Notes: a model not told the origin generated them from the letters alone. Shown: positions 6,821 through 58,847, counted from the stretch's first letter. The stretch is DNA of 64,000 bases from Neoechinorhynchus agilis (GCA_051530055.1 CM121342.1:12973480-13037479); one strand, 5' to 3'. Made by a program: numbers and translations.

Positions 6821-9800
6821 GTGAATAAAGGAGCAAAAGAAGTTCTAGCTTTCATACGTGAAGTTGCTTTCGTCCATAGAACAATGTCAACGATCTTGCG
6901 CAAATCATGGGAGATGATTCGCCGACTTGACCCACTAATTCTCGAAGTTGGCAACGAAATATCTGAACACCCTAGAAAGGAAGATCTCGAACGCCGGGCT
7001 AAGTGGCGATATCCCAATCTATTCATTTGGGTATTTAGGGTCGGAATTGTAAGCGCCGGAGCCTTGTTCGGTTTCACACTTCTGGGCGTACTTTTAAAAG
7101 CTGACCAAGAAGCTTACAGGCTGCCCCAAAATATTCAACCAATAAGGCTTTTCGTATTTATAACTCGCATTTTCTTGTTTTAAATACGGAAACATTTACA
7201 CGCTGATTATGACATTGAAATCGCTGAAATTCATGGAATACTGAACGGGCGATTACAATTAAACTTTAGGGTAATTGTTAAAATTCTAAAATCTTTAGCT
7301 TATTGAGTACATAGCTTAAACACACTAGCCGTCTTTTGGTGTTTTCGGGGAAAAACATAAGTCTTACAAAACCGGCTGATATTCAATCGACAGATGAAAA
7401 TTTTAACTGTGAAGGGACAATTGTCTACTTTATAAAAGGTTTTATGTCCATAATGACGTCTAAGGCTTTAAGGGTCGGTTTCGACTCTTACAACTTTGTC
7501 AACATTTGACATTCTTAATTCAGCCTGGGTTGTATCAATTAAGAATGGAATTCACCTCACAGATAACTCGATCAAGTGGAATCGCCGTGGCTGGCGAAAA
7601 TGAAGCGAATGGTAGAATATTCTATACCATATTTAAGGTATTAATGTAACTACTTCTGAGCTTAATATGAGTTCGTTCATGCAAGATAGTATTTTTATTT
7701 AAATGGGCCGATTTTTTAAATGAATATTTTTGCTCTTGCCGCAATTCTGGATGTTCGAAACAATCGCAAATGCTATATAAGGACCCAAAGGTACATGGGT
7801 CCTGTTCTTCGTGCATCAACAAAACGAGTTATTGTTATAATACATTTTATCTTTTGAGGCGAAAACTATTAAGTGAATGTTAGGATGCGTCAGAACGCTC
7901 AGCTTGTATAAAGAATTAAAATATAAATTTAAAATAATTGTAAGATTTTAGGATTTCAATTCGCAAACATCGATTCCGTTTTTGGACGAACCACTGTTTA
8001 AATCGACTTTTCGATTTTGCATGAATGTTTACGGCACAAAATACGAGGCAGTTGGAAGCCGTATAAAAAGTGAACGTCTTTATAATGGATGGAAGCGGTC
8101 ATGCATTGTGGTCACCGAACCTGAGTATATCGGAAACATTTTTATGTTGATCGGTTCAATATCTTGTGAAGAACTGGTGGTTCAACATGTTCGGTATTAC
8201 ATTTGTCAGCAAAATCGAAGAAAAGTAAATTCTATAAACATAATTCGCGTCAGTATTTGCACTCGCCTTCAGAGAATTTTTCACCTCGATTTTAATAGAT
8301 TCACGTAAAGGTCATAAATGAGCTTCAAGCTTTTTTCGGATTTCCTGCAGGTAACCAATCGGAATATGGAATAGCTATGCTTTCTACTCGTATAGACGGT
8401 TAGTGAAGCTTGACTGAAATATTAAAATTACTTATGTGCCTTACTAGACATTTATCCATCGCCAGGAAATATTGTTTTCTACGTTGGAGAGGTTGATGCA
8501 AGTGAGAGACACATTGAACACGAGCTCATACGTCATGAAGTTCGATCATTCGTCAACGATCTTGTTTGTGAGTATGATGATCGATGGTGGATTCAAAGCG
8601 GACTGGAATGCGTTTTGGAACAACTTTTCATGGACAAGAATTTCAGTTCGACCGATCGTATGTTTCGATTTTCTATACCATCCATGAAAAAACAATTACT
8701 CGCTCTTACTGCAGGAAAGATCAAGGTTTGTTGCATAAATATTAGCGTACTTTAATATTTAGTGGAATCTCCGTAAATAGTAGATTACTGCATAACATTA
8801 AATTTACAAACATTCTAACTTTAACGAACTGTACAATTCATAACAAATGTATCGCTGCAAAATCGATTTCTAATCAGCAAATTTCATAATACCTGAAATT
8901 AACGCTGCATTTAATTTTCGTATTAACGATCAATACTCCATGTCGAAAAATCAAGATCACTTATTAAACGCGATCTAATATTTAGTACAAGTTGTCTAAT
9001 CTCAATCAAGCAAAAATGCGTTCTTTGGAAAGTCAGGACTTGGCTATTGCGTCAATATTGACTCTACCATTCGCGATTTATAAAGCCAAAGTTAGATTGT
9101 ATTTATTAATTTCATATTTAAATCAGATGAAAAAAGAAAGCATTTGATGTCGTAAAATTGCTTGTAAACGCTAAAGATGAATATACTGTTTTACATTTTC
9201 CTTCAATAGCAAATAAATTCAATCGATTGATCAACCGAGAGTTGGAGAGAGAATCAATTTCACTGATTTCAATTAAGGTTAGTTTTCCAATTCTTTTTAA
9301 CCAAAGTTTTACAACGCCGATGTGAAACACGATTTTTTAGTTTCCAATAAAAATTTAGTACCATTTAAATACGAAAATTTCCCTTAAAATGGTTATGCTT
9401 ACGTAAAAGTACACTTAAACAATAATTATTAAGAAAACAACTTTTGCACAATTGAAAGTAAAACTATTACTTAGGCGGATAATTTGAATCCAAATATTTC
9501 CGTCATATCAATTGAACATCTAAACGTGGAGTCGCCGTTGCCTGCACCGCCTCCGCCATTTCCTGTATTCTTTACTGATGCAACTACGAAAATACAGTTC
9601 TTAATAAATATAAATTATGGCCAGCGAAAAACTATTCGAATTTATCACACTGGTAAATGGATAAAGGTTAGTCGTTATCTTGAGACAAATCAAAACATTT
9701 TGTTCTAGTTTAATCCTAACAAAGTCATTAGAGGGGTAATAAAATACGATAGGACGCTGTTAGGAGGTATTCTAGAGTCAATTACTGATTTGAATGCAAG

Positions 9801-11510
9801 CGATCGGTTCGACATTGAGTCTGATTTGTTTTTCCAGGTATTTAGAAGGAACAGAGTCGAATTGCAGTGATATCTTGCTTAGGTGCTGAGTGGAGACTTA
9901 TCCGCCTTAGACTACATTGATAGTCTATCAAATTTCAAACATGAGCGTGATATTCGAATCTGGTTGGATATTTTTGACAATCTTCAGCGGTTAAGATCTT
10001 TATTTGAGCAAGAGGAATTTCTATTTTAGTCGTTGTTATGCAGGAAATACGATAACAACGATTAATTATAAAGATTTTGGACCAAAAGATTGAGTACACT
10101 TTATCGTATATTTTGAATTCTATTATACCACTTGATAAATTAGGTATGATTTAAAACCACGGGGGATCTCTCATTTTCTCCGATATTGCAATCGATGCAC
10201 AAAAATCGTAAATCTTGCTCACGCCGATTTGTAGTTGTTTATTCGATGATGTTTAAAGCATAGTAAAGTACTTGCTTATGGCGTAAAATTAAAGGAATTT
10301 ATGAAATCCAAAATTTCGGTACAATCCCGTGCCTTTATCAAGGTTGCGAATTAAACTCTTTAACAACCTTGATAAAGGCACGATATTGTGCCGAAATATC
10401 GGAGTTAGTAAATTCCTTTAATTTTTACGCCACAACAAAGCACGAATAGCTCAATATTTTAGCGCATAGTAAAGTATAGTGAAACGGATTAACCGCTTCA
10501 AATACGATGGGGCTACCTGAAGGATTGATGATGCTATATTTTATTCGAAATTTTCGATCTCATAATAATCAACTTGGAAATTTTTAATTCTTAAAGTCCT
10601 ATGTACTATAGACCGTACTATAATAGTTTCCAAAGATTTTAATACTTATCAGATAACAAATTGATGCAACTGTTAGAGAAACTGAGAGATCCATGCATCA
10701 GCTTATTAAGCAAATTCCACACGATTAAACTGTATTGATCATTGGTTGCTTGCCTATTTTTCACGCGTTTAATTTTTCTATTCGTTGCAGTTGCGAAGTA
10801 CGAGGATATTTCTGAAGATGACCAACGTGTATTAGGACTTGTCCTACGAATTCTCGCAGATTCTGGAATGACAGACGCGAAGGTGGCAGCTTTGACGTTA
10901 AGGACTGAACATTTGAGACCGAACACGATTTTTAAAGAATCTATCCTTAGCGTTCAATACAGGCATATGTTTGATTTGATCGATGCGCCGACAACAGTTT
11001 TGACAGAGCACTGTCTTCTTTTGCGATCGATGGCAAATTCATTTCGGGAAGATGAACTCTTTCAATTAGTTCAGAAGACGATGGTCAGTATTAATTATTT
11101 TGCCTGCTTATATATTATAACAGAGTAACATAAAGAAAGCGCCAGGTGCATGTAATATTATGCCAATATTTGAAACTATTTGCCAAACTCTCGTCGGTCG
11201 ATCAGTTTTTTTGAAGGTACTTCCAAATATAAGTTACCATCCTTCCAAACTCTTGTCTCGAATTATATTGGTACGGAACCTCTTTTTCTTTAATTATTAT
11301 TTATCATTCGCCTTTCAGACATGTATGTCATATTCTACGAATCCACAAGACGCTAACCAAGTCGAGAAGGTATTTTATTTAACACTTTAGTTTCGGAAAA
11401 CGAATCCATTCATTAGTTGTATTCACTCGACGACCTCGATATGAATCAGTTTATTACCAAGAAATTAAGCTCAACAATTGAGAGAAACTTGAATATCAAA
11501 GCAGCTATCA
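6821..11510 (+). CDS. Multi-exon M1-family aminopeptidase N/ERAP-like type II membrane protein (exon structure only partly resolved)
   Basis: TM anchor then YRLPQNIQP..YDIEI (7116-7215), IPFLDEPLFKSTF (~7970-8010), AFFGFP (~8330), and ERAP1_C-like VIKYD...DRFDIESDLF (~9735-9835) and exon 10790-11085. Recognised from recalled family motifs. Confidence 0.6.
10271..10440. mobile_element. MITE-like long hairpin inside the aminopeptidase gene
   Basis: Perfect 18-bp IR gtgcctttatcaaggttg / caaccttgataaaggcac, extending imperfectly over ~75 bp per arm; 13-bp direct repeat gcatagtaaagta at 10258-10270 and 10464-10476. Confidence 0.7.
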
Positions 11511-12559
11511 ATCAGTATTTATAACTTTTAATATTGAAATGTTTAAAAAAGACAAAAGCTACATTTGTTTTAAGTTTGCACGGTATATGGGAGAAAGTTA
11601 TCTTAGCTATGAGAGACTATTTTTGAATAATCGTTGCAGCTAGTGTCCCAATGCACGTCTATATAAGGTAGTATTGCATTTCCTTCGATGACACTGTTAT
11701 TTCCGAAATTCGAGCGATTTTTATGATTTTGACCGAAACAATAAATCCTTTCTTTTTGTAGTTTTGCCATATTTATCCGATATTTCGTCGTATAATTCGG
11801 ACATTATCAAGGTTTGTCATTGATTGTAAGTATTCAATTGGAAAAAAATTAGTGAATTTAAATACGGGGTGGCAAAACTACCAAAAGAACGTATCTTTTC
11901 GCCCGAAGATCATCGCACAAGAAACAATAAATCTTGAAATGTCGTTTGGAAGTGCGACGTTCGCGCATCAAACTCCCATTTTCACATCAGTCACTTCCTG
12001 CAGTTGATAATAGTACTCTTTCTTCAGTTTATTCACCATTTCAAAACGTTTTAATGTTATAACATTAATCATATTCCGATCTACAGTCTATTTGTATTGC
12101 CATTATTTTCATGCCATCTAATCTTCATGAATGTTATTTGGACAAACTGTGACTTATTTTGAGAACTTAAAACCATCTTCACGTATATATTTTCACTCTT
12201 TGCGCTATATAAAAAAAGACGGAAAGTCCATTTTTTGCATAAGCAATCATGAAATTTCTGCGGTATTATTCTAGATGTTAAAAGTAAAATACCTTTACAG
12301 TAAGAAACATTTATTAATAAATGCGGCACGAACTGCTCATGAACATTTTTTATGATACATAAATTGGTACATAACGAAGAAATTGCTCCTGTGATGCTCT
12401 ATCTTTATAACGGCAGCGATAAAAAAACTTTGTTTCATAATTAAGATACAATTCGCGTTTTGAACAGACAGTCGTTTAGCTTAGATAAAGTTTGTGAAAA
12501 TCATGATTATAAGCAAGTATTCATTTCTTACAAGCCATTTTTCTAGCCACGAGTAAGCG

Positions 12560-15530: not shown

Positions 15531-16221
15531 CAAACACATCTACTAGTTATTTCGTGTCACATCCTACAAATGTGTCAGAAAGAAATGCGTAGGCGTCATT
15601 GTTCCACGTTAAGACTGCAAATACAACAGAATGTCCTTTATCCGCGAATTAACTGGGATCGAACGCCGCTCGAATAATAGATTTTTTTCGGGTAACCGAA
15701 ACCACCTCCTATTGTGATGTATCCAATTTTTAAATCTAGGTTACAGATATGCCGGAGGCAGTTGCTTAAAAAACTAGCATAGAATTTTATAATTCCACCT
15801 GTATTTGAAAATAATCACCTATTTGATCTCTTAAGCATTGTAAACTTTTTTCGCTGCAAAATCTCTTATTCTCTTGAGCAGTTGGACAGCATTGTGATAT
15901 GGACAATTGACGTTCGGATAATCGGTGTTCCACTGTATTTTGATTTTTTCCCGAGAGTAACCAATATAGCGTTTAATTTGACCAATGGGACACAGGAATC
16001 TAGTACAATATAATATTTATTTTCGGCTCCCCCGAAATGAAAGAGCTTTTATGTATTCTGATACACGCCTTCCTTGTCATGCAACTAAATTAGATTTTCG
16101 TTACTGTAGTCCTCTTTGCGCCATTAAAGCATTTTGTCTACCCATTATGAAAACGAGGCACAAAAGTTGTAATTTCGCAACACGCATTGCCTCCATTTCT
16201 CTTCTTCATTTCAGTTGATCA

Positions 16222-19200
16222 ATGGAAGTCCCGTCTTCGAGCCAGGCATTGGTTCAGGAAGGTCAACCTGCAATAACGGCAGATACTTCCAAAAGCCTAG
16301 AGGTCTACGCAGAATCACCGGAGGATTACAGTGCCCCGTATCGGCCTGATTTGGGCACAGAAGGCCGTGTCATTCGTTTGAGAGCAAACCATTTCCAAAT
16401 AGACGTACCACGGATCGTGATAGAGCACTATAGCGTCCATATTGTTCCGGAGAAATGTCCAAAGCGGATAAATCGAGAAATCATTCAAAAGTTATTTGAT
16501 CAGTGTGCGTTTGTCGATGCCCATCAACCGGTTGTTTATGACGGTCGAGAAAGTATGTACTCTTTGAGGCCTCTACCATTCGTAAGCGGCAAGGAGGAGA
16601 GCACGTTCAGTGTGACACTTCAGGGATCATACGAAGGTCAAGGTCGATCTTTTCAAGTAAAACTATCACCTTTGCCTCAACTAAACCTCGGTGTGTTGAT
16701 TGACGCACTAAATGGAAGCGTATCTGAGGTACCGACGGAGTGCATGCAAGCTCTTGATGTGATTTTAAGACATCTTCCAAATATGACTCACACTCCCGTC
16801 GGTCGAAGTTTCTTTTCACCGCCGGATATAAATAGGAATTACCTGGGAGGTGGACGCGAAGTTTGGTTTGGATTTCATCAAAGTATAAAGCCAACTCAAC
16901 ATCGCGTTTCTCTTAACATTGATGTCAGTGCCACCGCTTTCTATAAATCAGAAGATATGATTGATTTTATGTGCGAAGTTCTCGATATCAAAGACATATG
17001 AAGTTTGCTTTTTGATTCAAATTTCTTTATCATGCATCATCTACGATAAAGTATGGTTTAACGCGATGATCCCGGTATTGGTTCAACCGATCTGACCGAC
17101 ATGGAAAGTTCGATGGATTTGTATAAATGATTCGACAGGGGTTGAGAGGCGACTCCCAATCGGTATCGATGGTTAATTAATTTTTGATTTACTCCACATG
17201 TTAAATTCGCGTTATTAAAGTCCCGGGTAATCTTTAAGATTTTGCCAAAATAATGAGGTTGATGACTCGAATTTGATAAAATTGTTTTTCCGCTGCTAAC
17301 GCCATCAAAACCTTTATCTCCACTTCGAAAGAGCACAGCATTGAAAACTCAACTGATGAAGGATCTGATACTTTTCCCGAGGCGATGTGGAAAGGCTGAA
17401 TTTTAATTACATAAGCCTTTTTTTATCAAAGGGCGACTTTTATGGTTCACTTCTTTGGAGACTGTAAGCCGGCATGAAATCATTAGTCTTGAATTGACAC
17501 CTTTGAGCGAGCAACATTTCTTTGCATAGTGCTGGATTTTCGTGACGTATTTTTGAGTTTGCTTAACATTCGCAAATCTTTTGTTCAGCGAGCTTGGCCA
17601 GCTTTTCCTTGATCGCGATTTCATCATCAGTTTACCTTTAAACGGTTTAAAGACGTTACTAATAAGTTTGATATTTTGAGCGATGTAGGCTCATTATTGA
17701 TTCCCCCCCATTTCTCTCTTTTCCAACATTATTCAAAAAGCAAACCGTGAATGATCAACGCCGTCCACTAAATGAAAGTCAGCGTTTACGCCTAACTAAA
17801 GAATGCAAAGGTTTGCGAATCGAAGTAACTCATTGTGGTGGAATCAGGAGAAAATATCGCATATGTAACATAACTCGTAAGACGGCCCAGACGCAGACAT
17901 TTCCTCTGAAAACTACAGAAGGAAGTACAATCGACTGTTCAGTGGCCAAATATTTCAATGATCGGTATTCAATTAAGCTCAAATATCCGTATTTGCCATG
18001 TCTTCAAGTAGGTGCTGAACATAAACACACTTATTTGCCGCCTGAAGTTTGCCGGGTGGTTGCTGGGCAGCGATGTATAAAGAAACTTAGTGATATGCAA
18101 ACTTCTACAATGATAAAGGCAACAGCAAAATCCGCACCTGACCGTGAGCGTGAGATTAATGCACTTGTTCATCGAACTACGTTTAACACAGATCCATACG
18201 TCCTTGGATTTGGTATTCATCTCAACACCCAAATGACTGACGTCAATGGTCGAATCCTGTCCACTCCCAAAGTTCAATATGGAGGAAGAAGTAAACTTCA
18301 AGTGACGCCCGTGCTTGGAGTTTGGGATATGAGAGGAAAACAGTTCCATGTAGGTATCAGTATATCACATTGGTTTATTGCCTGCTTCGCCTCACAACGG
18401 ATGTGTCCGGAGGCGTCACTTAGATCGTTGATTTCAGATTTTGGATGCACATAGGTGGAAATCGAAATCAGCACATTCTCCTTTAGTCTAAAACATATTT
18501 AATGCTCTCTTTTTTCAATTGCTGCAATCAACGAAATAGATCGTTTGCGCAATCCCTTCAGAAAATTAGCAACGATGCTGGTATGCCGATTGTAAATCCT
18601 CCATTGTTTTGCAAATACGTCCCGAATGCAGCTGATCACGTTGAACCGCTCTTCAGATTTGGCCTTGAGAAAAACAAGGACATTCAGCTGATACTTGTTA
18701 TTCTACCCGGTAAAACATCGGTTTACGCTGAAGTCAAGCGAGTGGGCGACACAGTTTTAGGACTGGCCACTCAATGCGTACAGATTCGGAATGTGAATAG
18801 AACGACTCCTCAGACTCTAAGCAATCTTTGCCTAAAAATCAACGTGAAATTGGGAGGAATCAATAGCATACTTGTACCATCTGTGCGGCCAATCTCAGTG
18901 TTCTGCGAACCTGTTATCTTCATTGGCGCTGATATTACTCACCCTCCTGCGGGAGATCGAAACAAACCCTCGATTGCCGCGATTGTCGGTTCCATGGATG
19001 GACATCCCAGTAGGTATGCTGCTTGCGTTATGGCAGTGGATGCTGGGTTGCAGGGTGGTCGAAAATGTCTTGACAAAAATAACAGAAACCTTTTTCTAAT
19101 AGTGAAATCAAATTGGTGCAACAAGCTGTTTTTTAATTTAAAAAAATTGAAGTTAACCATCAGAAATTCTTCTTCTCTCGATCTGATACACTTAAGACTC

Positions 19201-20434
19201 ATTAGGGATAAATTTCGTAATAAAGAAAAACAACAAATTACCAATAATCACACTAAAATCATACTAAGATTTATATTTAGATAGTTTTTACAAGGTTCTC
19301 ATTAATGGAATTTGTACAAGCACTTTTTTGTTACAATTGTTAGGGGACTTATTTTTTACAGTCAAATATTTCATTTGTTCTAAATACTGTGTATTAACGT
19401 AAGGCGAACAACCAAAATTATTTGTGCTCTTTGAACGACTTTTGTACCAATGTTCAAAAGCATTGACATTTTATCACCTTTTTTTCTAATACACCATCGA
19501 ATAGCGTTTATAAATAAGTCTATTGTCTCTAATTGTGATTTAAACTTTCCTTAAGATCATCCAGCCACGCTGCGTTAGAATTCAGCAGCACCGACTCGAA
19601 TACATTGTTGAATTGAGCAAAATGGTCCGCGATGTTTTGGTGAAATTCTATTTGAGTACAGGATTTAAACCTGTCAAAATCATAATGTACCGAGACGGTC
19701 TTACTGATAACCAGGCTCGGGCGGTATTTGCACGCGAGCTCATGTTTATCCGAGAAGCCTGTATGAGTCTAGAGAGCGCCTATAAGCCAGGTATAACGTA
19801 TGTGAGCGTTCAAAAGCGTCACCATACCCGACTATTCTGCGTCGATCGTCAAGATCAGAATGGGCGAAGTGGGAACATTCCTCCTGGTACAACGGTGGAC
19901 GTGACTATCACTCATCCGAACGAATTTGATTTCTATTTATGCTCTCACGCTGGAATTCAAGGCACTTCAAGACCATCTTATTACCACGTCCTTTGGGACG
20001 ACAATGAATTTAAATCAGATGATCTACAAGCCTTAACGTATCAGCTTTGTCATACATATGTAAGATGTACGCGTTCAGTTTCTATTCCTGCTCCTGCTTA
20101 CTACGCTCATTTGGTTGCTTTCCGAGCTAGACACCATCTTGTTGACAGGGACCACTCAGAAGGATCGTCGAGTCTGTTCACTGATTTAGGAACATCTCAT
20201 GTACAATCGGATACAATGGAGAGCGAATATAGAGGCATCAATAGTGGAGTAAATGGATCTGAACTGACTAGTGATAGGTCCAACCCTCTTATTTCGGACT
20301 ACATAGTGAACAGTCTTAATCAAATATCGATCTCGCATCATGAAGAAGTATCTACGGAACCATTACAAACTACACCAACGCAATCACCCATTATTGTTCA
20401 TCCAAACACGAGGAAAGTCATGTATTTTGCCTAG
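16222..20434 (+). CDS. AGO: Argonaute, AGO clade (N, PAZ, MID, PIWI; catalytic Asp/Asp/His motifs present); 4 exons approx. 16222-16998, 17750-18422, 18539-19030, 19578-20434
   Basis: [93 protein letters not shown]. Junctions placed by recalled AGO consensus and are non-canonical (see findings). Confidence 0.97.
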
Positions 20435-23708: not shown

Positions 23709-24647
23709 ATGGATCGATTTTGTGCTGTAGTATCAAAAACGTGCGGATTGGGTCATAAATTGGATAAACCAGTACAAAAATCAAAAAAATTCTCTTTAAA
23801 CAAGGTACTAAGACGCAATAAACTTCCCGTTGCAACAAAAGATGAGATTTCAGGATACACATCTCGAGGTACAGGGTCGACTGATGAATTTAAGAACCAG
23901 CCGAGGATCATTAGTTTTTTAAAGGTAACTAAAGGAACGCCAAGGTGGGCTTTTAGTGAAGATGAGAGTAAAATGAAGATTGTCATTTGTTCGTGATGGT
24001 TTGTTTTTTGTAGAATGTAACGTGCAAGAGCGAAATGTGCTAGCTAGATAGATAGTAAATCAGTTTTATTTTAATATATCAAGTAGTTTAGGAACAAATT
24101 TAATCTCCGGTACATCTAAAATCAGATTAATTTGGACGCTCACCAATTTGTTGAAACAAAGACAATCTTTAATAAGATACTTAAATCATCAATTGATGCC
24201 GTCTTTACAACGGTGAATGAAGGCGGTGAAGATCTCTTTAAGCGGGTGTTCAATTACGACGCATCGTTTAAAGAGAAGATTAAAATACAAAGGAATTACT
24301 CAGCAGAACGAGTGGACTCGCTTTTTAGTACACATTCGATTCGCGTTCTAAGAATTGTAAAACAGTTAATTTATAACATCAATGATCCCCAATTCGCACA
24401 CGATGAACTGTCGCAGTTGGGACGAACGCACAAAGGATTTCGGGTTGATAGTCCTCAGATGGATGTTATGCTCACGAATTTTCTCGATCTACTTGAACGA
24501 TTCGATTGGCAGAATTGGAACTCGGCTAGCGAAAACGCATGGATGAAATTCATCGCCGGCGTCTTCTCGTTACTTACATTGCCCCTGGAAACTAGTGAGG
24601 CCAAAGCTGAGAAAATCGATTCCGTCCAATGTGTAAGAGTGTCTTAA
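23709..24647 (+). CDS. Globin with N-terminal extension; exons approx. 23709-23970 and 24175-24647
   Basis: A-helix FSEDESK+ILKSS, GEDLFKRVF, distal THSIRVL, proximal LGRTHKGF, NAWMKFI. Confidence 0.85.
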
Positions 24648-26208: not shown

Positions 26209-28052
26209 ATGCGCTCGCATAGGGCTCAAAAGTCTATCTGTCAACTCGACTTCGTCCATGGTAACTTTGGTCTAACTCGAGTGTCATGTGGTCGACTTTG
26301 GTACCAAGAAAGTTTGAGAATCGATGGTCAATCTAAGACCTCATTTCCTCCAACAGTAGCAATACTAAACATCCCAATGACTGTTATGATTGACGATTTG
26401 GTTTCAAGCTTGTCTATAACTGACTGTTCCTGTTTTGCTGAAGTACGAATCGTTCTGGCACTCCCCTCGGCCGCCCAGTCGATCGAAACCGGCAAATGTA
26501 CGATCATTTGCCGCTTACATAATGAACGTTGCTTAAAAAATTTCGTTCGCATGTACGCTGACCGATGTATTATGCGGCTCAATAACTACAAGACTCGGAT
26601 AGTTCGTGTAAAAGCTGTGAACTTCTCATCGACGGATGAACCACCTCAGCCATGCATCCAATCAATTCTGCCCGTAATCAATGAGCACTCACATTGCGCC
26701 TTTTGCTTAGAATCGGCGATCAATCGCGATGAATGCTCTGTGAAAGAAGTGGATGACACTGACGTTCCTGTGGCTGTTCTTTGTAATCACATATTCCATG
26801 CACGATGCCTCAAAAACTGTCGGAATGTTCAATGCCCCGTTTGCAGACATGGAATGCTTGGACCGATCACTCCTCCCGGTCAATCAAACCATCAACGATG
26901 TAGACTTTGCAACTCGAAAGACGGACTTCTTATGTGCTTGTTCTGCGGGGAAGTGAACTGTGGTCGCCTCAGCGGTTCACATGGTTATTTACATTTTGTT
27001 GAAAGTGGACATTGCTTTGCGCTCGAAATGGATGATCTTCTTTCTAACCGATTTGATCATAGATTGAGAGACGAAAATGAAGGAATGGACTCTGATTGCA
27101 GCCATGAACAGCGCGTATGGGATTTTGTCAAAGTAAAATCTGGGAACAAATGTGCCGGGGGATTGCTGAATGTAACGAAGCCTTGAATTTTTACTGGAAA
27201 TTACGTTATTTTTAGGTAGTGGTATAAACATGTACGTTCTTGAATCTTTAGGTTGAAAATGCTTGACAGCCACGAACTGCTACCCTGCCCATAAAGAAAA
27301 TAGAAGTCCTTTTCATTTTGCGTCCTTAGTTGGTATACGAGGCATAAAAAATTCTGCTAAATTTGAATGACTTTCTTTGTGACACAGAAAATTAGAGGTT
27401 GGGATTAGACTGATATAAGTATCCGGCACATTGGTCCGTATCATTTGTGGATCGCATAATTGTGGCTCAATTGGATAATGAGGAGGGGCGAAAACTTATT
27501 GCAGGAAAGAGCCGGGAAGCGCCCTTGATTGGCGGTATGTACAGTGCAGAAATCCATTTCCATTTGGAGCAATACATTGCGGACGTGATGGTAGACCAGG
27601 CAAGACTTTTTGATCAGCAAATACTTGCTATTGAAGCTCGCAAGGTTGATGAGATGCGTAAGGTTAAAATTGCAGGTCTTGAGAAAGAAGTGGCTGATTT
27701 GGTAAAGTGTTTGAATTCCCAGGAAATCGAAAGTGGTTATATCCAAGAAAAATGCTTGCAAAGTGATAAAGAGTTTCGCTTGGCTAAGGAAGAGACAAAT
27801 GTGCTTTTAACTGAGATTGAATCTATTCAGAGTGAGAACGACCAACTTGACGCAGAGCTTAAGGAAATGACCTCCGAGTATATTGACTTGGTATCGCAAA
27901 TTAAGGATGTTACGTTCCACTTGAAAGCACATGAAAGTGTGAAGAATTTGGATGTAAATGACGAGGAGTTACAGAATGCGAGTATTGAGACGAGACAGCC
28001 ACCTTTAAATGCAGAAAGTAAAACGCATAGACGGCGGCGAAATAGAAGGTAG
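26209..28052 (+). CDS. BRAP: BRCA1-associated protein BRAP/IMP-like E3 ligase (BRAP2 domain, RING, zf-UBP, coiled coil); exons approx. 26209-27135 and 27441-28052
   Basis: RING CAFCLE..LCNHIFHARCL..CPVCR; zf-UBP LLMCLFCGEVNCGR...HF.ESGHCFAL; QRVWDF; C-terminal coiled coil. Confidence 0.9.
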
Positions 28053-29026: not shown

Positions 29027-31796
29027 TTATACCCAAGCGTTCTTAACAATCGACCGCTGAGCAAAAAGTTTTGCTAAAAAGCAACTAACTGTTAGCATTG
29101 CCATAATTCCTGCTATCAGCCGGCGATCGAAATCCTCTCGGAGTGCATCAAATGAGATTTCTGATGGAGTGAACGAGCGAAGCATTAAATCAGATCCAAA
29201 TACAAATGCAAGTGAGACTGATTCCAGTCTACCGGACTCACTGGTTTCGATTCCTCTGACTCGCGCCAATTCTTCTTTTTTATTAAGACTCGTACGATAA
29301 TCCTGCGGTAGAAAAATAAACCTAGGATCCTGTAAATAAGCATCCGGGCATGGATCTATAGAACTCCATGGTACGATGAAGCAAGTCCCTTCTTTTGTGG
29401 CGAACAAAAGGGACCGTGGAGTCAGTGCTTTACTTGTCTCTGAGACTCCAAGAGAGACCACATTCGTAAGGGGTGGTAAGAATTTGATGCATGTCCTACT
29501 CGTGACATCCGATCCATCTCTAAAGAACGAAATAGCGACCAAATATCCGCCAAACCGTTTGTTTTCGCTTTTACAAGTGTACGCTACCCAGTTATCGGTT
29601 GAGATCATTCTCAGCGATTTTTGAGAGCACAGTTCGCCGTGATTTGCTTGATAAAGAATATGGCCCGTCTTTGAGTTGAATACTGTTGTATAAGTACTAC
29701 TAATTGATGAAGAAATTACAGTTAACATGTGCGGATCGCAGTATTTGTGAATCAATGTTCCGTTTGGAAGAGAAATCTGCTCAGCGTATGCCTTTATGTC
29801 ATGTTTCGGCTGAAGCAGAAGTATCATATCACCAGGAACACGCGCAGTCCACACAAATTCACCGTTTGACAATCGAGCCTCAATTGTGGTCACGTCTTTC
29901 AACATATATACAACCATTTGTTCTTTTTCCTTTCCCACTTCGGCCAAACCTCCTTTGTTCAGATAAACAACGGTCTCCTTGAAATTTAAACGATCCATAA
30001 TAGCGCCATCTAATGAGTTCAATCTTGTAAAAACACTTCCAGTGATGTGTAGCAACATTGTAGAGTTCAATCGCAAAAGTTTCCCTTCGCCAAGTTTTGT
30101 TTGCATCCACAGAACCCGACCTCCGGCACCCAGACAATATACGGATCCTGATTCGCTGAGAACGTATACTCGCTTCTGATTGGCTGAAATTACAGCATGC
30201 GACAATCGAGCCAGATCTTCGTAGCGAGTGTATTTAAGAATTAACGTATCACCATCCATCTCGAAACAATGAACATTCTGTAGAAAATCTTTTGCTATCA
30301 GAACATTGTTATGGTAATAAATCAAAACGACTTCCATATTTAAGTTAAATATTCGATTTCCGGGAACATGCACGTTATTGTTTGTGTCAACAATAGCCCC
30401 GCTCCTGTGATCAATGGTTTTTATCATCAAGGGATCCACATCCATAGCACGCTTACCATAATAACATTCGCCATTGGAAGAACACAAATATCCATTCTTT
30501 ATATAATGCCCTTGAAGTATCTCTGTCGTTAAATCACCTCGAACCATTAATAATCCATTGGTCTCAAAGCACACAAGTGCCTCATTTGACAGAATCTCAC
30601 AGTTTTCAAGGGGAAAATTAAATGACTGAACAAGTGCTCGACCGTTTAACGGGTTGAGTTTCAAGACAACTTTTGTATCCAAGTCTATTATTGATACTTG
30701 GTCTAACTTTACAATCAGATGCGGGTTGACAATGGGCGTTTCTAATTCAGTGCGAAAAAGCTGATTACCGTCTCCGTAATGGAACGCCGATATTGATTTA
30801 TTATTAAGAACGTATACTCCTTTAAGCCACTTTGAGTAAACAAGCTGATCTTCGGGATTTACAATCAGCAAATATTTTCACAAAATTGGACATAATTTTC
30901 ATCAAGACTTATAACCAAGTGAGAAATTCATGTCTACACTTTTTTAATTTCATAGGAAACAATTGGTTGCTGTTATTAAAACACATCATCGATGACAAGT
31001 TTCCTAACTAAACAAAGTTAGCGGTTGATGGCGAACTCTCTAAAGTTTCGAAATTTAAATCATAAAATAGTCACATTGTGCATAGAAGCGGGTAATTGAT
31101 ATTTTTCGTCGTTTTCTCGAGAAAATGGATGCAACTAATAACGGTATAATGATCAGTGGAAATGGACATGTGACTGACTGACTTGGGGTAATAATTATTT
31201 AAGCTAGAACAAAAAACTACATTACCAACTCATTTGATGCAAAAGTAAAGCGTATTTGACTCCAATGCGTTTTACTTCGATAAAAAATGTTTTCTGTGCT
31301 CTCGTTGGCTACTCCATTGTTCCTGGAAGAAACGCCAAGATTTAGCACATGGATTTGGAAAAAAAGGGTTAATAATGTTGATAAATGAGCCATTGCAAAC
31401 AACATTGGTGTCGTACCAAATTCGAACATTCTGATAATATTTGACGATTTCGTATATACCCCGTTCCCACACGATAAATCCGTGCTTGACATCCATGCAG
31501 ATTAATCGTCCAGCAGTGGTTTTAAAGATCAATCGATCACCTGTTTCATCGATGAACTCGTGTTTGACGATCTCACAATCGTCTTCGAATGTTTTTCGCC
31601 ACTTGATTGTACCATCGTACACGGAAATTGCCGCGATGACGTTAGACCGACCGACCAAGACGAGATCGTTAAAGCTGTTCAATCTAAAGCCAACTACATC
31701 GCCAACCAACTGAACATACCACTGAAATCCATCAAGTTTTGAAGTTCCTGAATCGCAAACGGACAAAATAGCTAGGAAAGCGATTAAAATTAACAT
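29027..31796 (-). CDS. EMC1: ER membrane protein complex subunit 1; exons approx. 31796-31438 and 30872-29027
   Basis: Signal peptide plus PQQ-like N-terminus (VLVGRSNVIAAISVYDGTIKWRK), LGVSETSKALTPRSLLF, GIETSESGRLESVSLAFVFGSDL, FDALREDFD plus C-terminal TM helix ending KNAWV. Confidence 0.9.
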
Positions 31797-44125: not shown

Positions 44126-44182
44126 AATTAAAAAAATTTTTACTTATTTAAAATTTTATTTTGCGGTCATATCAAATCCGCA

Positions 44183-47150: not shown

Positions 47151-47189
47151 CTGAAGAAGTCCAGCGTGATTAGACGAAATATTTCAATT
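47145..47189 (+). ncRNA. Minimal type I hammerhead ribozyme at the Penelope ORF stop
   Basis: aattga CTGAAGA A GTC cagcgtgatta GAC GAAA ta T T tcaatt: perfect 6-bp stem I, 3-bp stem II, palindromic stem III; predicted cleavage after 47183. Confidence 0.75.
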
Positions 47190-47740: not shown

Positions 47741-47743
47741 AGA

Positions 47744-47914
47744 TCAATAGCGTAATTTCTCGGGCGTTGAGAACGGTGAACTTCCACAACATCTTGGAGC
47801 CCGCCCATCTTTGTCGACTAGACGGTCGTCGACATGACGGAATTTTGGTCTTTCAGTGGCGGGAGGACAAATGCCTTCTCTGGGACGCAACGCGTGTGAA
47901 CACCCTCGAACACA
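47744..47914 (+). mobile_element. CRE REL-domain fragment abutting the satellite array
   Basis: NILEPAHLCRLDGRRHDG..KCLLWDATRVNT. Confidence 0.8.
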
Positions 47915-54154: not shown

Positions 54155-54745
54155 GTGGGCATCCACAATTTATTCGACCATGAATTGTGGGTATAGATCG
54201 CAGAAGACAATGATGAATTTAGCAGATGTATTCTTGTGAGATCGATCCACTTTGACGCTTTATCAACCCATGAGGATAGCTTGGCCCACTCATAAGGGAG
54301 GTGGGTTAGGGCACGCCGAAAGCTGCGACAGTTGGCCGCTGTCCTTACTTACCGCATGTTCAACAACAACAGTTTATTCGTCTACAAATCATGGGTATAG
54401 ATCGCAGATGACAATTAGCAATGCAGCAGATGTATTCATATAAGATCGATCCACTTTTACGCTTTAATGGCCTAGCAAGAAAGCTTGGCCCAATCATAAT
54501 GGAGGTTGGATAGCGCATGGAGAAAGCTGCGCATAGTTGACCGCTGTCCTTACTAACCGTATGTTCAACTACAATTTATTCGGCCATGAATCATGGGCAT
54601 AGATCGCAATTGACATTGTCAATGTAGCAGATGCATTCATGTAAGATCGATCCACTTTGACACTTTATTGGCATATGAGGATTGTTTGGCCCACCTATAA
54701 GTTAGGTTGGATAGCGCATGGAGAAAGCTGCGCATAGTTGATTGC
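54155..54745. repeat. Continuation of the satellite (~3 units, the first markedly diverged)
   Basis: Same unit motifs (gatcgatccactttgacgc, ggcccactcataag) with more substitutions near 54155-54400. Confidence 0.95.
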
Positions 54746-55296: not shown

Positions 55297-56014
55297 TTAA
55301 GATCGATCACCAACATTTTGTGCTTCGTCGATTGTTGCGCAAACTCTGAAAGCCTCAACGATTTTCAGTATTTGATCAATTTTTCGCTCAATTTCTTCTT
55401 TATCATTGTTTTTAGAAGCGGCAGGCCAGCGTTCTTCTCTTCCTACATTTTCTTTTGATATTGAAGCAAATCCACTTTTGTTAAACAAGTGAATATCGTC
55501 AATGGTGATATGACGCAAAATTCCTTTTGGATCAACAATAACAAAACCTTTGTAAACAGCTCCATCTTTAATAAATCCAAAGGATTTCGAGATTTTTTGC
55601 TTCCCATCGGTGAGCATTGTAAACTTCATTGATCCTATAGCACCATCAGCGCGTAATTCTTTACTCCTAAATTTTTTGTTCAAATTAAATTTCAATTAGT
55701 ACTGATGTTTACCAAGCAAGATGATTGGATTTGCTAGCCGTAGAGCAGGTGAGAGCTTCACAATTGATTTTATGGAAATCCTTCGCTCTATTGTTTAGAA
55801 CAGCGATCGCCGTAGGACATGCATACTCGAATGCTAGCGGATAAAAGAATATTACTAAGAATTTTTCTTTATATTCCGACAACGAAACTATGTTTAATCT
55901 GCCTTCTACAACGGCTTCAGTCTCGAAATACGGTGCTGCATGGTTGATACCTGCTTCTTCCATTGAACGGGAACGAGAGACAAGGACACGTCTGAAAAAC
56001 AGTCCACTTGACAT
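55297..56014 (-). CDS. Peroxiredoxin (AhpC/TSA, Prx1 group), divergent, with possible mitochondrial leader; canonical 46-nt intron 55712-55667
   Basis: FFYPLAFEYACPT peroxidatic motif, HLAW|SKELRADGAIG, VIVDPKGILRHITI, KIDQILKIVEAF. Confidence 0.88.
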
Positions 56015-57033: not shown

Positions 57034-58847
57034 TTATAGGAACCTCGTCCTATAGCCGAGACATTGAGCCTTTAGGGGGAGACAGAAGAGTCGAGCATGG
57101 AATAGTCGAAGATGGTCGACCATGTACATTCCAGTTAATACACCGGCAAGGACACTGATCTTCATCACCATTGCACTTGTTATCAATCCGTTTCCTGGCG
57201 TGAATGAAATTAGGCGGAGTATACACGCTTTCACGTAAGATGATAGATAATCGACCATTATGAGACATGATGCCTTCAGAAGGTTCTCATGAGAAATTGG
57301 ACAAGAACATCAAAACTCACCGCGACAATTGTGCCCGAAGAAGTGTCAACTAAGGGTGGACATGGACTGTAGAAAGCAATAAATACAAGATAGACTCCCA
57401 GCAAAATAACCAATAGCATGTATATGTTGAGCAAGAGAAGATTCTTGGTCGGTTTCTTGTATGCCAAAATGACTGCACTGAATCGTATGGCATTGGCTAA
57501 ACGAGGTGATAGCGAAATAAAGTACATCATTATGGAAAGTCTTCTTTAAATCAAGTCATGTACCGTCGGTAGAGTATCGATTTCCTTCGAAATTTCATTT
57601 TGGTTTAGCCCCTTATACAAAATCGACTATTCTCAAGTCGTGATGACAATTTTTCGAGGCTCGTCTATAGAAATCCCGATATAAGAAGAAACCAAAGAAA
57701 CGATTTGTGCCCGCTTAGCCTATGTGCGAGAGCCTCGATTTTCATTTGTTTCACGGTCGGTCTGAGGCGGATCTGTCGTACTATTCCTCTGATTAAAATT
57801 GCGTTATCATCCAAAGAAAAGTGGTGGACGTGGTATTCAAGTTGCCTTGGAACTTACCGATGATTATAACATTGTTTGCTGTTTTGAATCCGTACGGAAG
57901 GATCGTGTACGTGTAAAGGGAGCTCATAAGTCCCCAAAGCAAAAATGCTAATATAGCGAGAAGCAACATGAGTTCCCAAAAGATAAAAGGTTTCATTTGA
58001 TACTCATTCTTGATAGAATTAGCTGTTAATCGCTCTCGCTCGTTTTTGTCACCTTGATCGTCGATTCTAATTTGAATTTTCTTGAACTTCGGTACATACT
58101 CCATTATTATAAACGCCAAGAGACAAAGTCCCATAATGAACGCAAGGCAACCAAAAAAAATATTAACGCTAAATCGCGGTTCTGTGTACTTTTCAACTAG
58201 TACGGAATGATTAGAAGCTGTATGATGATCGAAGTACACCAGCGGATTGACCACTTGTCCATTGAGCTCACAATACGGTTCAGCGCCACCTTGGATCAAT
58301 TTCAATATGGCTGGTATGAATCCCGTGAGACTTTCCCCCACTAAAAGTGCTGATAGATACACCTGAGGGTATAGTTTTGTGTATGGATAAAAAATGATCA
58401 TTGAACAATTATCGACTAAACCGAGACATGTTGCAAGAAGAAGCAAGGGAATGCTGTGCCTTTGAGTGCCTACTAACACTGTATAGTTCCAGAATTTTGA
58501 CATGAGTGCAAGAGATAAACCTCCAGTTAAAATAACGACAATGATCGCAACGTTCAAATGAACGATTTCTGGTCTTAGCATCTGTAGTGCATACTGTAGT
58601 TGTCTTTAGATGATTGTTTCTATATTTTTAAAGACAACTACCTCGTCTAAATTACAATTGGTCCTATTATTGGAATTTCGATTGCTATGCAAAGATAGAC
58701 AGACAGTTTCCATCCTTCAGGGAGCATGGGCACCATTAAAGGAAGTTCAGCTAACACGCCAATTAAATCAATCCACGAAGAAAGTGAAAATATGGTTATA
58801 AGAGTAAATACGACTTTGTTGATTCTAATACTGTTACCGTTCTCCAT
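57034..58847 (-). CDS. SLC52A: SLC52-family riboflavin transporter, 4 exons; introns ~58650-58593, 57857-57497 (GT-AG) and 57320-57274 (GT-AG)
   Basis: SSWIDLIGVLAELPLMVPMLPEGWKLSVY, GLVDNCSMIIFYPY, YLSALLVGESLTGFIP, PRFSVNIFF, LPYG, SPCPPLV, SSYVK. Confidence 0.92.

What the first reader, a model, noticed from the sequence alone, without database searches (positions are those of the whole stretch)
7143..58649. A second class of gene interruption: TA-flanked, hairpin-closed, non-GT-AG intervening sequences in seven conserved genes
Seen in sequence: at homology-predicted or frame-rescuing junctions in the aminopeptidase, AGO (three), globin, BRAP, EMC1, peroxiredoxin and SLC52 genes, the segment to be removed (54-751 nt) has (i) inverted repeats of about 8-16 bp starting 0-7 nt inside each end, (ii) a TA just before it and a TA (TG once) as its last two bases, so TA-to-TA removal restores the frame, and (iii) often longer junction direct repeats (tagatcgtt, tgcgtta, aaatatt, gata). 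The inserts are unrelated to one another. The same genes also carry ordinary GT-AG introns. Established analogues: Tc1/mariner TA target duplications and MITEs, transposon-derived non-canonical introns of Fritillaria, structure-defined nonconventional introns of euglenids, and TA-bounded IESs excised from Paramecium DNA. Inference: this animal removes these segments either by a structure-guided non-canonical splicing route or by precise DNA excision (germline-limited IES-like elements). Caveats: TA is common in AT-rich DNA, the direct repeats make exact junctions ambiguous, and several cases have a weaker GT-AG alternative.
Basis: partly seen in the sequence, partly recalled or inferred. Interest (0 to 1): 0.93.

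Follow-up and report, generated by a model that had tools for sequence, protein, structure and literature searches.

The report
Repeat-bounded non-canonical introns, thorny-headed worm
In a fish-parasitic thorny-headed worm (Neoechinorhynchus agilis), the Argonaute and BRAP genes are broken by four transposon-like inserts with no usable GT-AG splice sites at the spot where they must be cut out, which points to an unreported non-standard way of removing them; no RNA data could be reached to prove it.

Summary
The window is Neoechinorhynchus agilis (Acanthocephala), GCA_051530055.1, CM121342.1.

**Solid cases (4 of 9).** The three AGO inserts (751, 116 and 547 nt) and the BRAP insert (305 nt) all break the reading frame. 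Exact removal restores proteins that align without gaps to 60 (AGO) and 12 (BRAP) orthologues. No GT-AG, GC-AG or AT-AC pair achieves this. The BRAKER models cut out conserved residues or split the gene.

**Repeats.** These four have end-pairing or inverted repeats far beyond chance: perfect repeats of 13, 9 and 10 bp, plus one imperfect pairing. Two carry target-site-like direct repeats of 9 and 7 bp. Three candidate GT-AG introns show no end pairing.

**Weak cases (5 of 9).**
- Globin and SLC52 have good GT-AG alternatives.
- The aminopeptidase insert has an AT-AC alternative.
- The peroxiredoxin segment is in-frame and stop-free, so it may be coding.
- EMC1 is not defined by homology.

The TA-TA rule does not exceed chance. 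A 681-nt candidate GT-AG intron also has paired ends.

**Best reading.** These are transposon-derived introns, some of them non-canonical, resembling those of Amoebophrya and Fritillaria. Whether removal happens in RNA or DNA cannot be decided here. Public RNA-seq (PRJNA1223661) would settle it.

The parts
16222..20434 (+). Argonaute (miRNA-class AGO) gene: four exons and three inserts, with no ordinary intron
   Evidence: Exact removal of the three inserts gives a 932-aa ORF collinear with 60 orthologues.
16996..17746 (+). AGO insert J1, 751 nt (1 mod 3). The register is ambiguous over 16995-16999 / 17745-17749. No direct repeat.
   Evidence: The best GT-AG alternative (16978-17740) loses 4 aa net; an AT-AC alternative adds 1 aa. 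The annotated GT-AG intron 16924-17740 deletes 24 conserved aa.
17003..17015 (.). J1 left inverted-repeat arm, GTTTGCTTTTTGA
   Evidence: 13-bp perfect inverted repeat, 4 nt inside the end. None of 3000 random segments of 751 nt reached 13 bp.
17733..17745 (.). J1 right inverted-repeat arm, TCAAAAAGCAAAC
18423..18538 (+). AGO insert J2, 116 nt (2 mod 3). Ten equivalent registers within the 9-bp direct repeat TAGATCGTT (18421-29 and 18537-45). Inverted repeat TCGTTGATT 18425-33 / AATCAACGA 18526-34.
   Evidence: A GT-AG alternative built from the two repeat copies (18427-18539, GTTGAT..AATAG) adds one Ser. The closing stem is not in the minimum-free-energy fold.
19031..19577 (+). AGO insert J3, 547 nt (1 mod 3). 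7-bp direct repeat TGCGTTA (19024-30 and 19571-77). Imperfect terminal pairing (TGGCAGTGGATG / CATCCAGCCA).
   Evidence: dG -24.5, P = 0.005. The GC-AG alternative turns the invariant SRYAA into SRYPR; the GT-AG alternative adds 3 aa. The annotation needs a 14-nt micro-exon.
27133..27437 (+). BRAP insert, 305 nt (2 mod 3). The register is unresolved over 27125-27136. 3-bp direct repeat GTA. Inverted repeat AATGTGCCGG 27149-58 / CCGGCACATT 27423-32.
   Evidence: The canonical GTAAAA..TATAAG intron (27133-27419) adds 6 aa where 12 orthologues have fixed spacing. BRAKER split the gene into P0241 and P0242.
58592..58647 (-). SLC52 segment: 56 nt (TA register) or 58594-58655 as a GT-AG intron (GTAATT..CTACAG, 62 nt). 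13-bp hairpin arms at 58629-41 and 58596-608.
   Evidence: z = -2.66. Homology prefers the 56-nt removal only marginally, so this is probably an ordinary intron with a hairpin.
7142..7201 (+). Aminopeptidase-like gene, short insert containing an in-frame TAA. Read as 54 nt (7145-7198, TA register) or 60 nt (ATAAGG..AC). 8-bp inverted repeat 7153-60 / 7181-88.
   Evidence: z = -2.8; no GT-AG or GC-AG solution; an AT-AC solution exists. Gene identity is weak.
7271..7951 (+). Candidate GT-AG intron (GTAATT..TTTTAG, 681 nt, phase 0) in the same gene, with a 27-nt, 78% terminal inverted repeat
   Evidence: (I8). Shows that end pairing is not limited to the non-GT-AG inserts.
23925..24125 (+). Globin: GT-AG intron (GTAACT..ATCAG, 201 nt), the only in-frame GT-AG pair whose length fits the annotated 245-aa model.
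   Evidence: The canonical reading is favoured.
30871..31435 (-). EMC1 candidate insert, 565 nt, with a 7-bp direct repeat AAATATT (31442-36 and 30877-71)
   Evidence: Not defined by homology. End pairing not significant (P = 0.31). A 7-mer match is expected by chance in the space searched.
55401..55493 (-). Peroxiredoxin extra segment, 93 nt (direct repeat GATA) or 96 nt (collinear). In-frame, no stop, no end pairing.
   Evidence: It may be a coding insertion.
55667..55712 (-). Ordinary peroxiredoxin intron, GTAAAC..TACTAAT..TTTAG (46 nt), used as a control
   Evidence: No end pairing.

Best explanation
These segments are relics of short, non-autonomous DNA-transposon-like elements, with inverted repeats at or near the ends and sometimes target-site-like duplications. 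They landed inside exons of N. agilis genes and now behave as introns.

Some appear to use ordinary GT-AG sites: the 681-nt aminopeptidase intron, SLC52 and globin. At least four do not have them where the protein requires the cut: AGO J1-J3 and BRAP. I infer that these four are removed from the pre-mRNA at non-canonical junctions. I also infer that pairing of the two ends brings the junctions together, as proposed for Amoebophrya introner elements, and that tolerance of odd termini is comparable to Fritillaria.

**Shown:** the inserts, their repeats, the lack of consensus sites at the homology-required junctions, and the failure of GT-AG-only gene models.

**Inferred:** removal at the RNA level, the exact junctions, and any role for the stem.
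For: - **Exact removal restores the proteins.** It yields an uninterrupted AGO that aligns without gaps to 59-60 of 60 orthologues at all three junctions. For BRAP it restores a spacing that is invariant in 12 orthologues.
- **The four inserts cannot be coding.** Their lengths are not multiples of three.
- **No standard splice pair works.** No GT-AG, GC-AG or AT-AC pair reproduces the conserved length and residues.
- **The RNA-seq-guided BRAKER models fail here.** They delete 24 and 32 conserved aa, invent a 14-nt micro-exon and split BRAP. This suggests that no canonical intron hints existed at these sites.
- **Direct repeats of 9 and 7 bp mark insertion events** into once-continuous exons. 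The chance of a direct repeat of 7 bp or more is about 0.1%.
- **Ends pair far more than chance.** Three of the four homology-placed inserts have a perfect inverted repeat of 9 bp or more, against a null of 0.3-0.8%. The fourth has an imperfect pairing with P = 0.005.
- **Candidate GT-AG introns do not pair.** Three of them have inverted repeats of 4-5 bp and P of 0.46-0.86. That is 4 of 4 against 0 of 3, Fisher P = 0.03 by my own calculation.
- **The genes look functional apart from the inserts.** The exons carry no other defects, and N. agilis has working miRNAs and piRNAs (PMC12256650).
- **Precedents exist.** Amoebophrya has inverted repeats of 8-20 nt plus direct repeats of 3-5 nt at non-canonical introns (PMC7789003). 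Fritillaria has a short repeat (YAY) before the 5' site and at the intron end (PMC13326754).
Against: - No transcript, cDNA or read evidence could be reached, so removal itself and its level (RNA or DNA) are unproven.
- Each insert has a near-canonical alternative costing a small change:
  - J2: GT-AG built from the two repeat copies, +1 aa and in frame
  - J1: AT-AC, +1 aa
  - J3: GC-AG, same length
  - BRAP: GTAAAA..TATAAG, +6 aa
- Polypyrimidine-plus-AG motifs lie 0-50 nt upstream of the 3' junctions.
- There is no common terminal dinucleotide and no fixed distance between stem and junction. The summed spacers are 6-21 nt, so no structural ruler is evident.
- The J2 closing stem is not in the predicted minimum-free-energy fold.
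- No second copy of any insert lies in the 64 kb, so membership of a transposon family is unshown.
- The sample is four solid cases from one locus.
Confidence: 0.5

Rival explanations
1. Ordinary spliceosomal splicing at nearby weak or cryptic GT-AG, GC-AG or AT-AC sites. The inserts would then be transposon-derived but canonical introns ('introners'), and the mature proteins would carry small insertions, deletions or substitutions.
For: - Alternatives exist for every case.
- In J2 the 9-bp duplication itself supplies GT in copy 1 and AG in copy 2, leaving an in-frame 3-nt scar. This is the way known introners create splice sites.
- SLC52, globin and the 681-nt aminopeptidase intron have consensus-like GTAA donors and YAG acceptors.
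- Polypyrimidine-AG motifs lie near the 3' ends of J1, J2, J3 and BRAP.
Against: - The alternatives change the length or residues of segments that are invariant in 60 AGO and 12 BRAP orthologues.
- The J2 and J3 donors are GTT.., whereas all six consensus-like donors in the window have a purine at +3 and A at +4.
- BRAKER, which takes GT-AG hints from RNA-seq, used none of these alternatives. It built worse models instead.
- J1 has no in-frame GT near the junction.
Confidence: 0.17
2. The inserts are disabling transposon insertions that are not removed. These would be insertion alleles picked up from the pooled-worm assembly, or young pseudogenes, with functional copies or alleles elsewhere.
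For: - The assembly came from a pool of worms (PMC12690905).
- The intact 9- and 7-bp duplications and perfect inverted repeats look young.
- No RNA evidence of removal is available.
Against: - Three independent frame-breaking insertions sit in one otherwise flawless 2.8-kb AGO coding sequence, and another in BRAP within 10 kb.
- No other stops or frameshifts occur.
- Only one N. agilis AGO appeared among the top hits, while miRNAs are functional in this species.
- High-frequency null alleles of an essential gene are not expected to reach an assembly consensus three times over.
Confidence: 0.12
3. Precise, programmed excision from DNA (IES-like germline-limited segments), with somatic nuclei carrying the restored genes.
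For: - Exact removal of the insert plus one repeat copy restores the ORF, as for ciliate IESs.
- Inverted repeats and duplications are symmetric DNA features.
- No splice-site consensus is present.
Against: - The inserts are present in an assembly made from whole worms, so they appear to be in the majority of the DNA.
- The ends do not match the Paramecium TAYAGYNR consensus (read directly).
- The duplications are 9, 7 and 3 bp, not TA or TTAA.
- From my own knowledge, precise intragenic DNA elimination has not been reported in any animal.
- No transposase-like gene is in the window.
Confidence: 0.05
4. For the in-frame, stop-free segments only (peroxiredoxin 93-96 nt, BRAP 72 nt at about 27036-27107): lineage-specific coding insertions that stay in the protein.
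For: - Both are multiples of three, have no stops and show no end pairing.
- Acanthocephalan proteins are fast-evolving.
Against: - Both interrupt motifs that are collinear in all relatives examined: DLP|VGRSVDE in peroxiredoxin and ALE..Q|RVWDY in BRAP.
- Both are flanked by 4-bp direct repeats (GATA, ATGA).
Confidence: 0.5

Closest known systems
Amoebophrya (dinoflagellate) non-canonical introns / introner elements (Farhat et al. 2021, PMC7789003)
   Same: - Non-GT-AG termini with no consensus.
- Inverted repeats of 8-20 nt between the intron's 5' and 3' ends.
- Short direct repeats overlapping the exon/intron boundaries, with variable splice position relative to the hairpin.
- The same inverted-plus-direct-repeat layout on a minority of canonical introns.
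- No transposase encoded.
   Different: - That system is a protist in which more than 60% of introns are non-canonical and removal is supported by RNA-seq.
- This is an animal, the sample is small, the direct repeats reach 9 bp, no repeated families have been seen, and removal is not demonstrated.
Fritillaria borealis (tunicate) non-canonical introns (Henriet et al. 2019; PMC13326754)
   Same: - An animal with exon-interrupting segments lacking GT-AG.
- A short repeat at the exon end and at the intron end.
[quoted passage not shown]
- Removed by the U2 spliceosome in that species.
   Different: - In Fritillaria 95% of introns are non-canonical, dominated by the AG/AC and AG/AT classes with a YAY triplet rule. 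Neither feature is met here.
- Terminal hairpins are not described in the paper I read.
- No U2AF or snRNA data are available for N. agilis.
Introners: DNA-transposon-generated spliceosomal introns (Huff, Zilberman and Roy 2016, cited in PMC13326754; recalled from my own knowledge)
   Same: - Terminal inverted repeats plus a target-site duplication.
- Insertion into exons.
- The duplication can supply a splice site, as in the J2 GT...AG alternative.
- The candidate GT-AG introns with terminal inverted repeats (7271-7951, SLC52) fit well.
   Different: - Introners are multi-copy families with canonical GT-AG sites.
- The four core cases here lack workable GT-AG sites and have no second copy in the 64 kb.
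Euglenid nonconventional introns (PMC12501133 and PMC11170887, listed; details recalled from my own knowledge)
   Same: - No GT-AG borders.
- Intron ends pair to juxtapose the exons.
- They coexist with conventional introns in the same genes.
   Different: - Euglenid introns have a defined pairing register near the ends and characteristic motifs.
- No fixed register is seen here.
- The lineage is unrelated.
Paramecium TA-bounded IESs (recalled from my own knowledge)
   Same: - Short, unrelated, transposon-derived inserts inside coding sequence.
- Precise removal restores the ORF.
   Different: - Those are removed from DNA by a domesticated piggyBac transposase.
- They have a TA duplication and a TAYAGYNR end consensus, which is not met here.
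- There is no evidence of DNA elimination in acanthocephalans.

Membership tests
U2-type GT-AG (or GC-AG) spliceosomal introns | GT (or GC) at the 5' end and AG at the 3' end, at the junction that yields the functional mRNA | tested here: not met
   - Not met for AGO J1-J3 and BRAP at the homology-optimal junctions.
- Met as a plausible reading for globin, SLC52, the 681-nt aminopeptidase intron and the peroxiredoxin 46-nt intron.
U2-type GT-AG (or GC-AG) spliceosomal introns | Removal from pre-mRNA through a lariat | not testable with these tools
   No N. agilis RNA data are in the reachable collections.
U12-type / AT-AC introns | 5' ATATCCTT-like donor and TCCTTAAC branch site; AT-AC or GT-AG termini | tested here: not met
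   - The J1 AT-AC alternative begins ATGAAGTT.
- The aminopeptidase AT-AC alternative begins ATAAGGCT. That resembles a U2-type AT-AC intron, not a U12-type one.
Terminal-inverted-repeat DNA transposon / MITE insertion | Terminal or subterminal inverted repeats | tested here: met
   - J1: 13 bp; J2: 9 bp; BRAP: 10 bp; SLC52: 13 bp; J3: imperfect.
- All are far above the null.
Terminal-inverted-repeat DNA transposon / MITE insertion | Target-site duplication flanking the element | tested here: inconclusive
   - J2 has 9 bp and J3 has 7 bp (7 of 8), both significant.
- BRAP has 3 bp and J1 has none.
- The lengths do not fit one superfamily.
Terminal-inverted-repeat DNA transposon / MITE insertion | Multiple related copies in the genome | tested here: not met
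   No second copy is in the 64-kb window. The rest of the genome could not be searched.
Amoebophrya-type introner elements | Non-canonical termini plus an 8-20 nt inverted repeat between the intron ends plus a short direct repeat across the boundaries | tested here: met
   AGO J1, J2 and BRAP meet the inverted-repeat criterion. J2, J3 and BRAP have direct repeats of 9, 7 and 3 bp. Criteria are taken from PMC7789003.
Amoebophrya-type introner elements | Junctions supported by RNA-seq | not testable with these tools
Fritillaria-type non-canonical introns | AG/AC or AG/AT termini, with a YAY triplet before the 5' site and as the last three intron bases | tested here: not met
   None of the equivalent registers of J1-J3 or BRAP gives YAY|...YAY| or AG..AY (registers listed; rule).
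Paramecium-type IES | TA at both boundaries with a TAYAGYNR end consensus | tested here: not met
   - A TA register is available but does not exceed chance.
- The ends read TATGAAGT, TAGATCGT, TATGGCAG and TAAAATCT.
Paramecium-type IES | Absent from somatic DNA, present in the germline | not testable with these tools
   No read data were available.

The most novel reading that the evidence does not exclude
An animal removes transposon-like inserts from inside essential genes by precise, programmed DNA excision (IES-like), or by a structure-guided RNA cut-and-join route that does not use the spliceosome.

The evidence does not exclude either route. The junctions share no splice consensus, exact removal restores the genes, and the ends pair.
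Probability: 0.06. Interest if true: 0.97.

Novelty: new variant of a known kind. Interest (0 to 1): 0.68.

Why it matters
**Intron evolution.** If RNA data confirm the junctions, Acanthocephala would be a new animal lineage, after the tunicate Fritillaria, in which exon-interrupting transposon relics are removed without GT-AG. That would give an independent system for two questions: how transposons become introns, and how splice-site recognition relaxes.

**Gene annotation.** GT-AG-only gene finders mis-model these genes. The AGO model lacks more than 56 conserved residues and contains a fabricated micro-exon. BRAP is split into two genes.

This may inflate the apparent gene loss and sequence divergence reported for these parasites. 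Genome BUSCO is 47% against 55% for the transcriptome (PMC12690905). It could also distort drug-target lists built on those annotations.

Tried and rejected
- **Transcript evidence.**
  - A junction-spanning AGO peptide found no near-identical protein; the best hit was 61%.
  - An exact look-up of a window ORF returned nothing.
  - An SLC52 search returned nothing.
  - The paper's supplement had nothing useful.
- **RNA families and tRNAs.** Rfam and tRNA scans of the window found nothing.
- **Repeat copies.** Self-BLAST of the inserts found no other copies.
- **Homology for two genes.** PDB and Pfam searches for the aminopeptidase N-terminal part and for the EMC1 N-terminal junction found nothing usable. 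Those junctions therefore stay undefined.
- **TA-TA as a rule.** Rejected as not exceeding chance.
- **Other end rules.** The Paramecium end consensus and the Fritillaria YAY rule are not met.
- **A fixed stem-to-junction distance.** None found. The spacer pairs are (8..4, 0..4), (4..-5, 2..11), (16..13, 5..8) and (8..6, 2..4).
- **ORFs inside the J1 insert.** Two 95-aa minus-strand ORFs have no family match.
- **J2 as a single closed hairpin.** Not supported by the fold (z = -0.43).
- **Literature.** I found no report of non-canonical introns or introners in acanthocephalans.

Full report
**Where the window comes from**

- An AGO query built from the window's ORFs hit one protein at 93% identity: 'hypothetical protein ACOME3_007724 [Neoechinorhynchus agilis]' (P0001).
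- Its gene lies on GCA_051530055.1, CM121342.1, at 12,979,701-13,003,913, and window position 16222 corresponds to the start codon.
- The window is therefore a 64-kb stretch of the chromosome-level assembly of this fish-parasitic acanthocephalan.
- That assembly was made from a pool of worms and annotated with BRAKER using RNA-seq (PMC12690905).
- Neither that paper nor the related ones mention introns or splice sites.
- Full-text searches found no report of non-canonical introns or introners in Acanthocephala.

**The AGO gene: the strongest evidence**

AGO is four long ORFs. tblastn with tick and Brachionus AGO places them in order, with overlaps of only a few residues. For every donor/acceptor pair around each gap, I translated the joined sequence and scored it against the orthologues. 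The best solutions were:

| Insert | Length removed | Registers | Direct repeat |
|---|---|---|---|
| J1 | 751 nt | 16995\|17747 to 16998\|17750 | none |
| J2 | 116 nt | ten equivalent registers | 9 bp, TAGATCGTT |
| J3 | 547 nt | eight registers | 7 bp, TGCGTTA |

- None of the lengths is a multiple of three.
- Exact removal gives a 932-aa ORF. In a MAFFT alignment with 60 orthologues it has no gap within 14 residues either side of any junction, and 59-60 of the 60 orthologues have no gap there either.

Canonical alternatives exist, but each has a cost:

- **J1:** GTTCTC..AAAAAG loses 4 residues net. An AT-AC pair adds one residue.
- **J2:** GTTGAT..AATAG, built from the two copies of the duplication, adds one Ser.
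- **J3:** a GC-AG pair of the same length turns the invariant SRYAA into SRYPR. A GT-AG pair adds 3 residues.

The deposited model P0001 uses none of these. It removes 24 conserved residues at J1 (intron 16924-17740) and 32 at J2, and it threads a 14-nt micro-exon through J3. BRAKER takes its intron hints from canonical spliced reads. This behaviour is therefore indirect evidence that no canonical junction is used there. It does not show what is used.

**BRAP**

- A search of 1.8 billion representative proteins returned the two halves into which BRAKER split this gene (P0241, P0242), together with distant orthologues.
- All twelve full-length orthologues have exactly five residues between (V/T/C)WDY and the (Y/W/F)VHRL motif.
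- Only a 305-nt removal reproduces that spacing. The register is unresolved over about 12 nt and includes a 3-bp repeat, GTA.
- The attractive canonical pair GTAAAA..TATAAG adds six residues and scores 10 points lower.

**Are the repeats more than chance?**

I placed the insert ends by homology, not by looking for repeats. I then measured the longest perfect inverted repeat between the first and last 30 nt plus 10 nt of flank.

| Insert | Longest perfect inverted repeat |
|---|---|
| J1 | 13 bp, 4 nt inside each end |
| J2 | 9 bp |
| J3 | 6 bp |
| BRAP | 10 bp |

- In 3000 random window segments of each length, 9 bp or more occurred in 0.3-0.8% and 10 bp or more in 0.1-0.2%. 13 bp or more occurred in 0-0.2%. 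A direct repeat of 7 bp or more occurred in about 0.1%.
- With G-U pairs and bulges allowed, the end-to-end duplex energies were also beyond most random segments: P = 0.059, 0.048, 0.005 and 0.011.
- Three candidate ordinary introns show nothing comparable: peroxiredoxin 46 nt, globin 201 nt and kinase 132 nt have inverted repeats of 4-5 bp and P of 0.46-0.86.
- The inverted and direct repeats are therefore real features of the four solid cases.
- The J2 closing stem is not part of the predicted minimum-energy fold. An RNA role for the pairing is inference.

**The other five cases are weaker**

- **Globin.** The Pfam match starts downstream of both.
- **SLC52.**
  - The 13-bp hairpin is real (z = -2.66).
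  - GTAATT..CTACAG (62 nt) is a consensus-like intron.
  - The two human transporter structures favour the 56-nt removal by only a few points.
- **Aminopeptidase-like gene.**
  - Its identity rests on a sub-threshold ERAP1_C match (no match).
  - Its short insert carries an in-frame stop and has no GT-AG or GC-AG solution.
  - It does have an ATAAGG..AC solution of 60 nt. That solution restores the P-x-x-Y spacing I recall from M1 peptidases.
- **Peroxiredoxin.** The segment is 93-96 nt, in frame, stop-free and without end pairing. It may simply be translated. I found a similar 72-nt segment in BRAP.
- **EMC1.** The junction is not defined by homology. Its 7-bp repeat AAATATT is about what the search space would yield by chance. 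The ends do not pair significantly.

**The TA rule**

- A TA-before, TA-at-end register can be found for all nine cases. So can many other in-frame TA..TA/TG pairs at each junction.
- 44%, 35% and 13% of the window's 9-, 7- and 3-mers contain TA. The chance that the three duplications all contain TA is therefore about 2%, before allowing for the choice of dinucleotide.
- A 'GT-first' register is available in three of the four solid cases, with about the same probability.
- The 9- and 7-bp duplications are not TA target-site duplications. The ends do not match the ciliate IES consensus.

**Hairpin closure is not specific to the non-GT-AG inserts**

The window holds 53 inverted-repeat pairs of 12 nt or more within 900 nt of each other. 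One pair (27 nt, 78% complementary) sits exactly on the ends of a 681-nt, phase-0 candidate GT-AG intron in the aminopeptidase-like gene: GTAATT..TTTTAG, 7271-7951. Together with SLC52, this suggests a wider population of introns derived from transposons or foldback elements. Some of these have consensus splice sites and some do not.

**What it most likely is**

The duplications show that J2 and J3 were inserted into once-continuous exons. The inverted repeats give all four solid cases the anatomy of small non-autonomous DNA elements. The exons are otherwise intact, in genes this species needs, and its miRNAs and piRNAs are documented.

I therefore think the inserts are removed. The most economical route is from the RNA, at non-canonical junctions, as in Amoebophrya (inverted repeats of 8-20 nt plus direct repeats of 3-5 nt, variable junction relative to the hairpin) and, among animals, Fritillaria.

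I put this at about 0.5. The rivals:

| Rival | Estimate | Main point |
|---|---|---|
| Cryptic canonical splicing with small protein changes | 0.17 | Alternatives exist for every case but change invariant segments |
| Unremoved disabling alleles or pseudogenes | 0.12 | Unlikely three times over in one otherwise flawless essential gene |
| Precise DNA excision | 0.05 | The inserts sit in an assembly made from whole worms |

I found no common terminal dinucleotide and no fixed stem-to-junction distance, so I cannot offer a cutting rule.

**Comparison and novelty**

The anatomy matches the published criteria for Amoebophrya introner elements. It fails the Fritillaria AG/AY and YAY rule and the ciliate IES consensus. 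It is not shown to belong to any multi-copy transposon family. I rate it a new variant of a known kind: transposon-derived, partly non-canonical introns in a phylum where none have been described.

**Limits**

There are four solid cases from one 64-kb locus. No RNA or read data could be reached. The public RNA-seq project PRJNA1223661 and the deposited transcriptome would settle both the junctions and the RNA-versus-DNA question quickly.

Noticed in passing
window 16222-20434 and 26209-28052: The deposited gene models are visibly wrong here. AGO (P0001) lacks 24 + 32 conserved residues and contains a 14-nt micro-exon. BRAP is split into two genes (P0241, 327 aa; P0242, 171 aa).
   Followed up: yes
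window 27036-27107: A 72-nt in-frame, stop-free extra segment lies in BRAP between ALEMDD and QRVWDF. It is absent from 12 orthologues and flanked by a 4-bp repeat, ATGA. It contains a sequence resembling a 3' splice site (CTTCTTTCTAACCGATTTGATCATAG). It could be a coding insertion or another odd intron.
   Followed up: partly
window 47913-53518 and 54165-54741: A 204-bp satellite: 27.7 copies at 93% match, plus a diverged 2.9-copy block. It carries short ORFs that repeat with the unit.
   Followed up: partly
window 40414-41770 versus 60958-62801: Two copies of a repeat of about 1.2-1.8 kb, 82-94% identical and in inverted orientation about 20 kb apart. They bracket the retroelement, the satellite, and the peroxiredoxin and SLC52 genes. 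They contain a 119-aa ORF with no family match.
   Followed up: partly
window 43000-47900: Retroelement remains. One ORF (46422-47147, +) has a GIY-YIG endonuclease domain (E = 1.6e-6), as in Penelope-like elements. This fits reports that such elements are abundant in acanthocephalan genomes (PMC8557442, seen in the search list only). Further reverse-transcriptase-like debris may lie at 4900-6300, 12500-15700 and 21300-22100. Family searches there gave at best a sub-threshold RVT_1 match (4913-5263, E = 0.07).
   Followed up: partly
window 32280-32676 and 10268-10443: Nested or near-perfect inverted repeats (23-40 nt arms; a 62-nt, 87% foldback at 10285-10425). They look like small foldback or MITE-like elements in non-coding or intronic DNA. 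No clear target-site duplications.
   Followed up: partly
window 8426-8752: The aminopeptidase-like gene reads HELIRH where M1 peptidases have HExxH (motif recalled from memory). It may be catalytically inactive or very divergent. Neither Pfam nor PDB recognises the N-terminal two thirds.
   Followed up: partly
window 57279-57309 (minus strand): The last two SLC52 exon ORFs overlap in different frames. By spacing to the human transporter, a segment of about 47 nt must go (GTCCAA...ATAATG), and no GT-AG pair of workable length is present. This may be a further non-canonical case. The homology is weak.
   Followed up: partly
window 16999-17749, minus strand: The 751-nt AGO insert J1 contains two 95-96-aa open frames in the same minus-strand frame (17690-17406 and 17348-17061). 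That is unusual for AT-rich DNA. They have no family match.
   Followed up: partly
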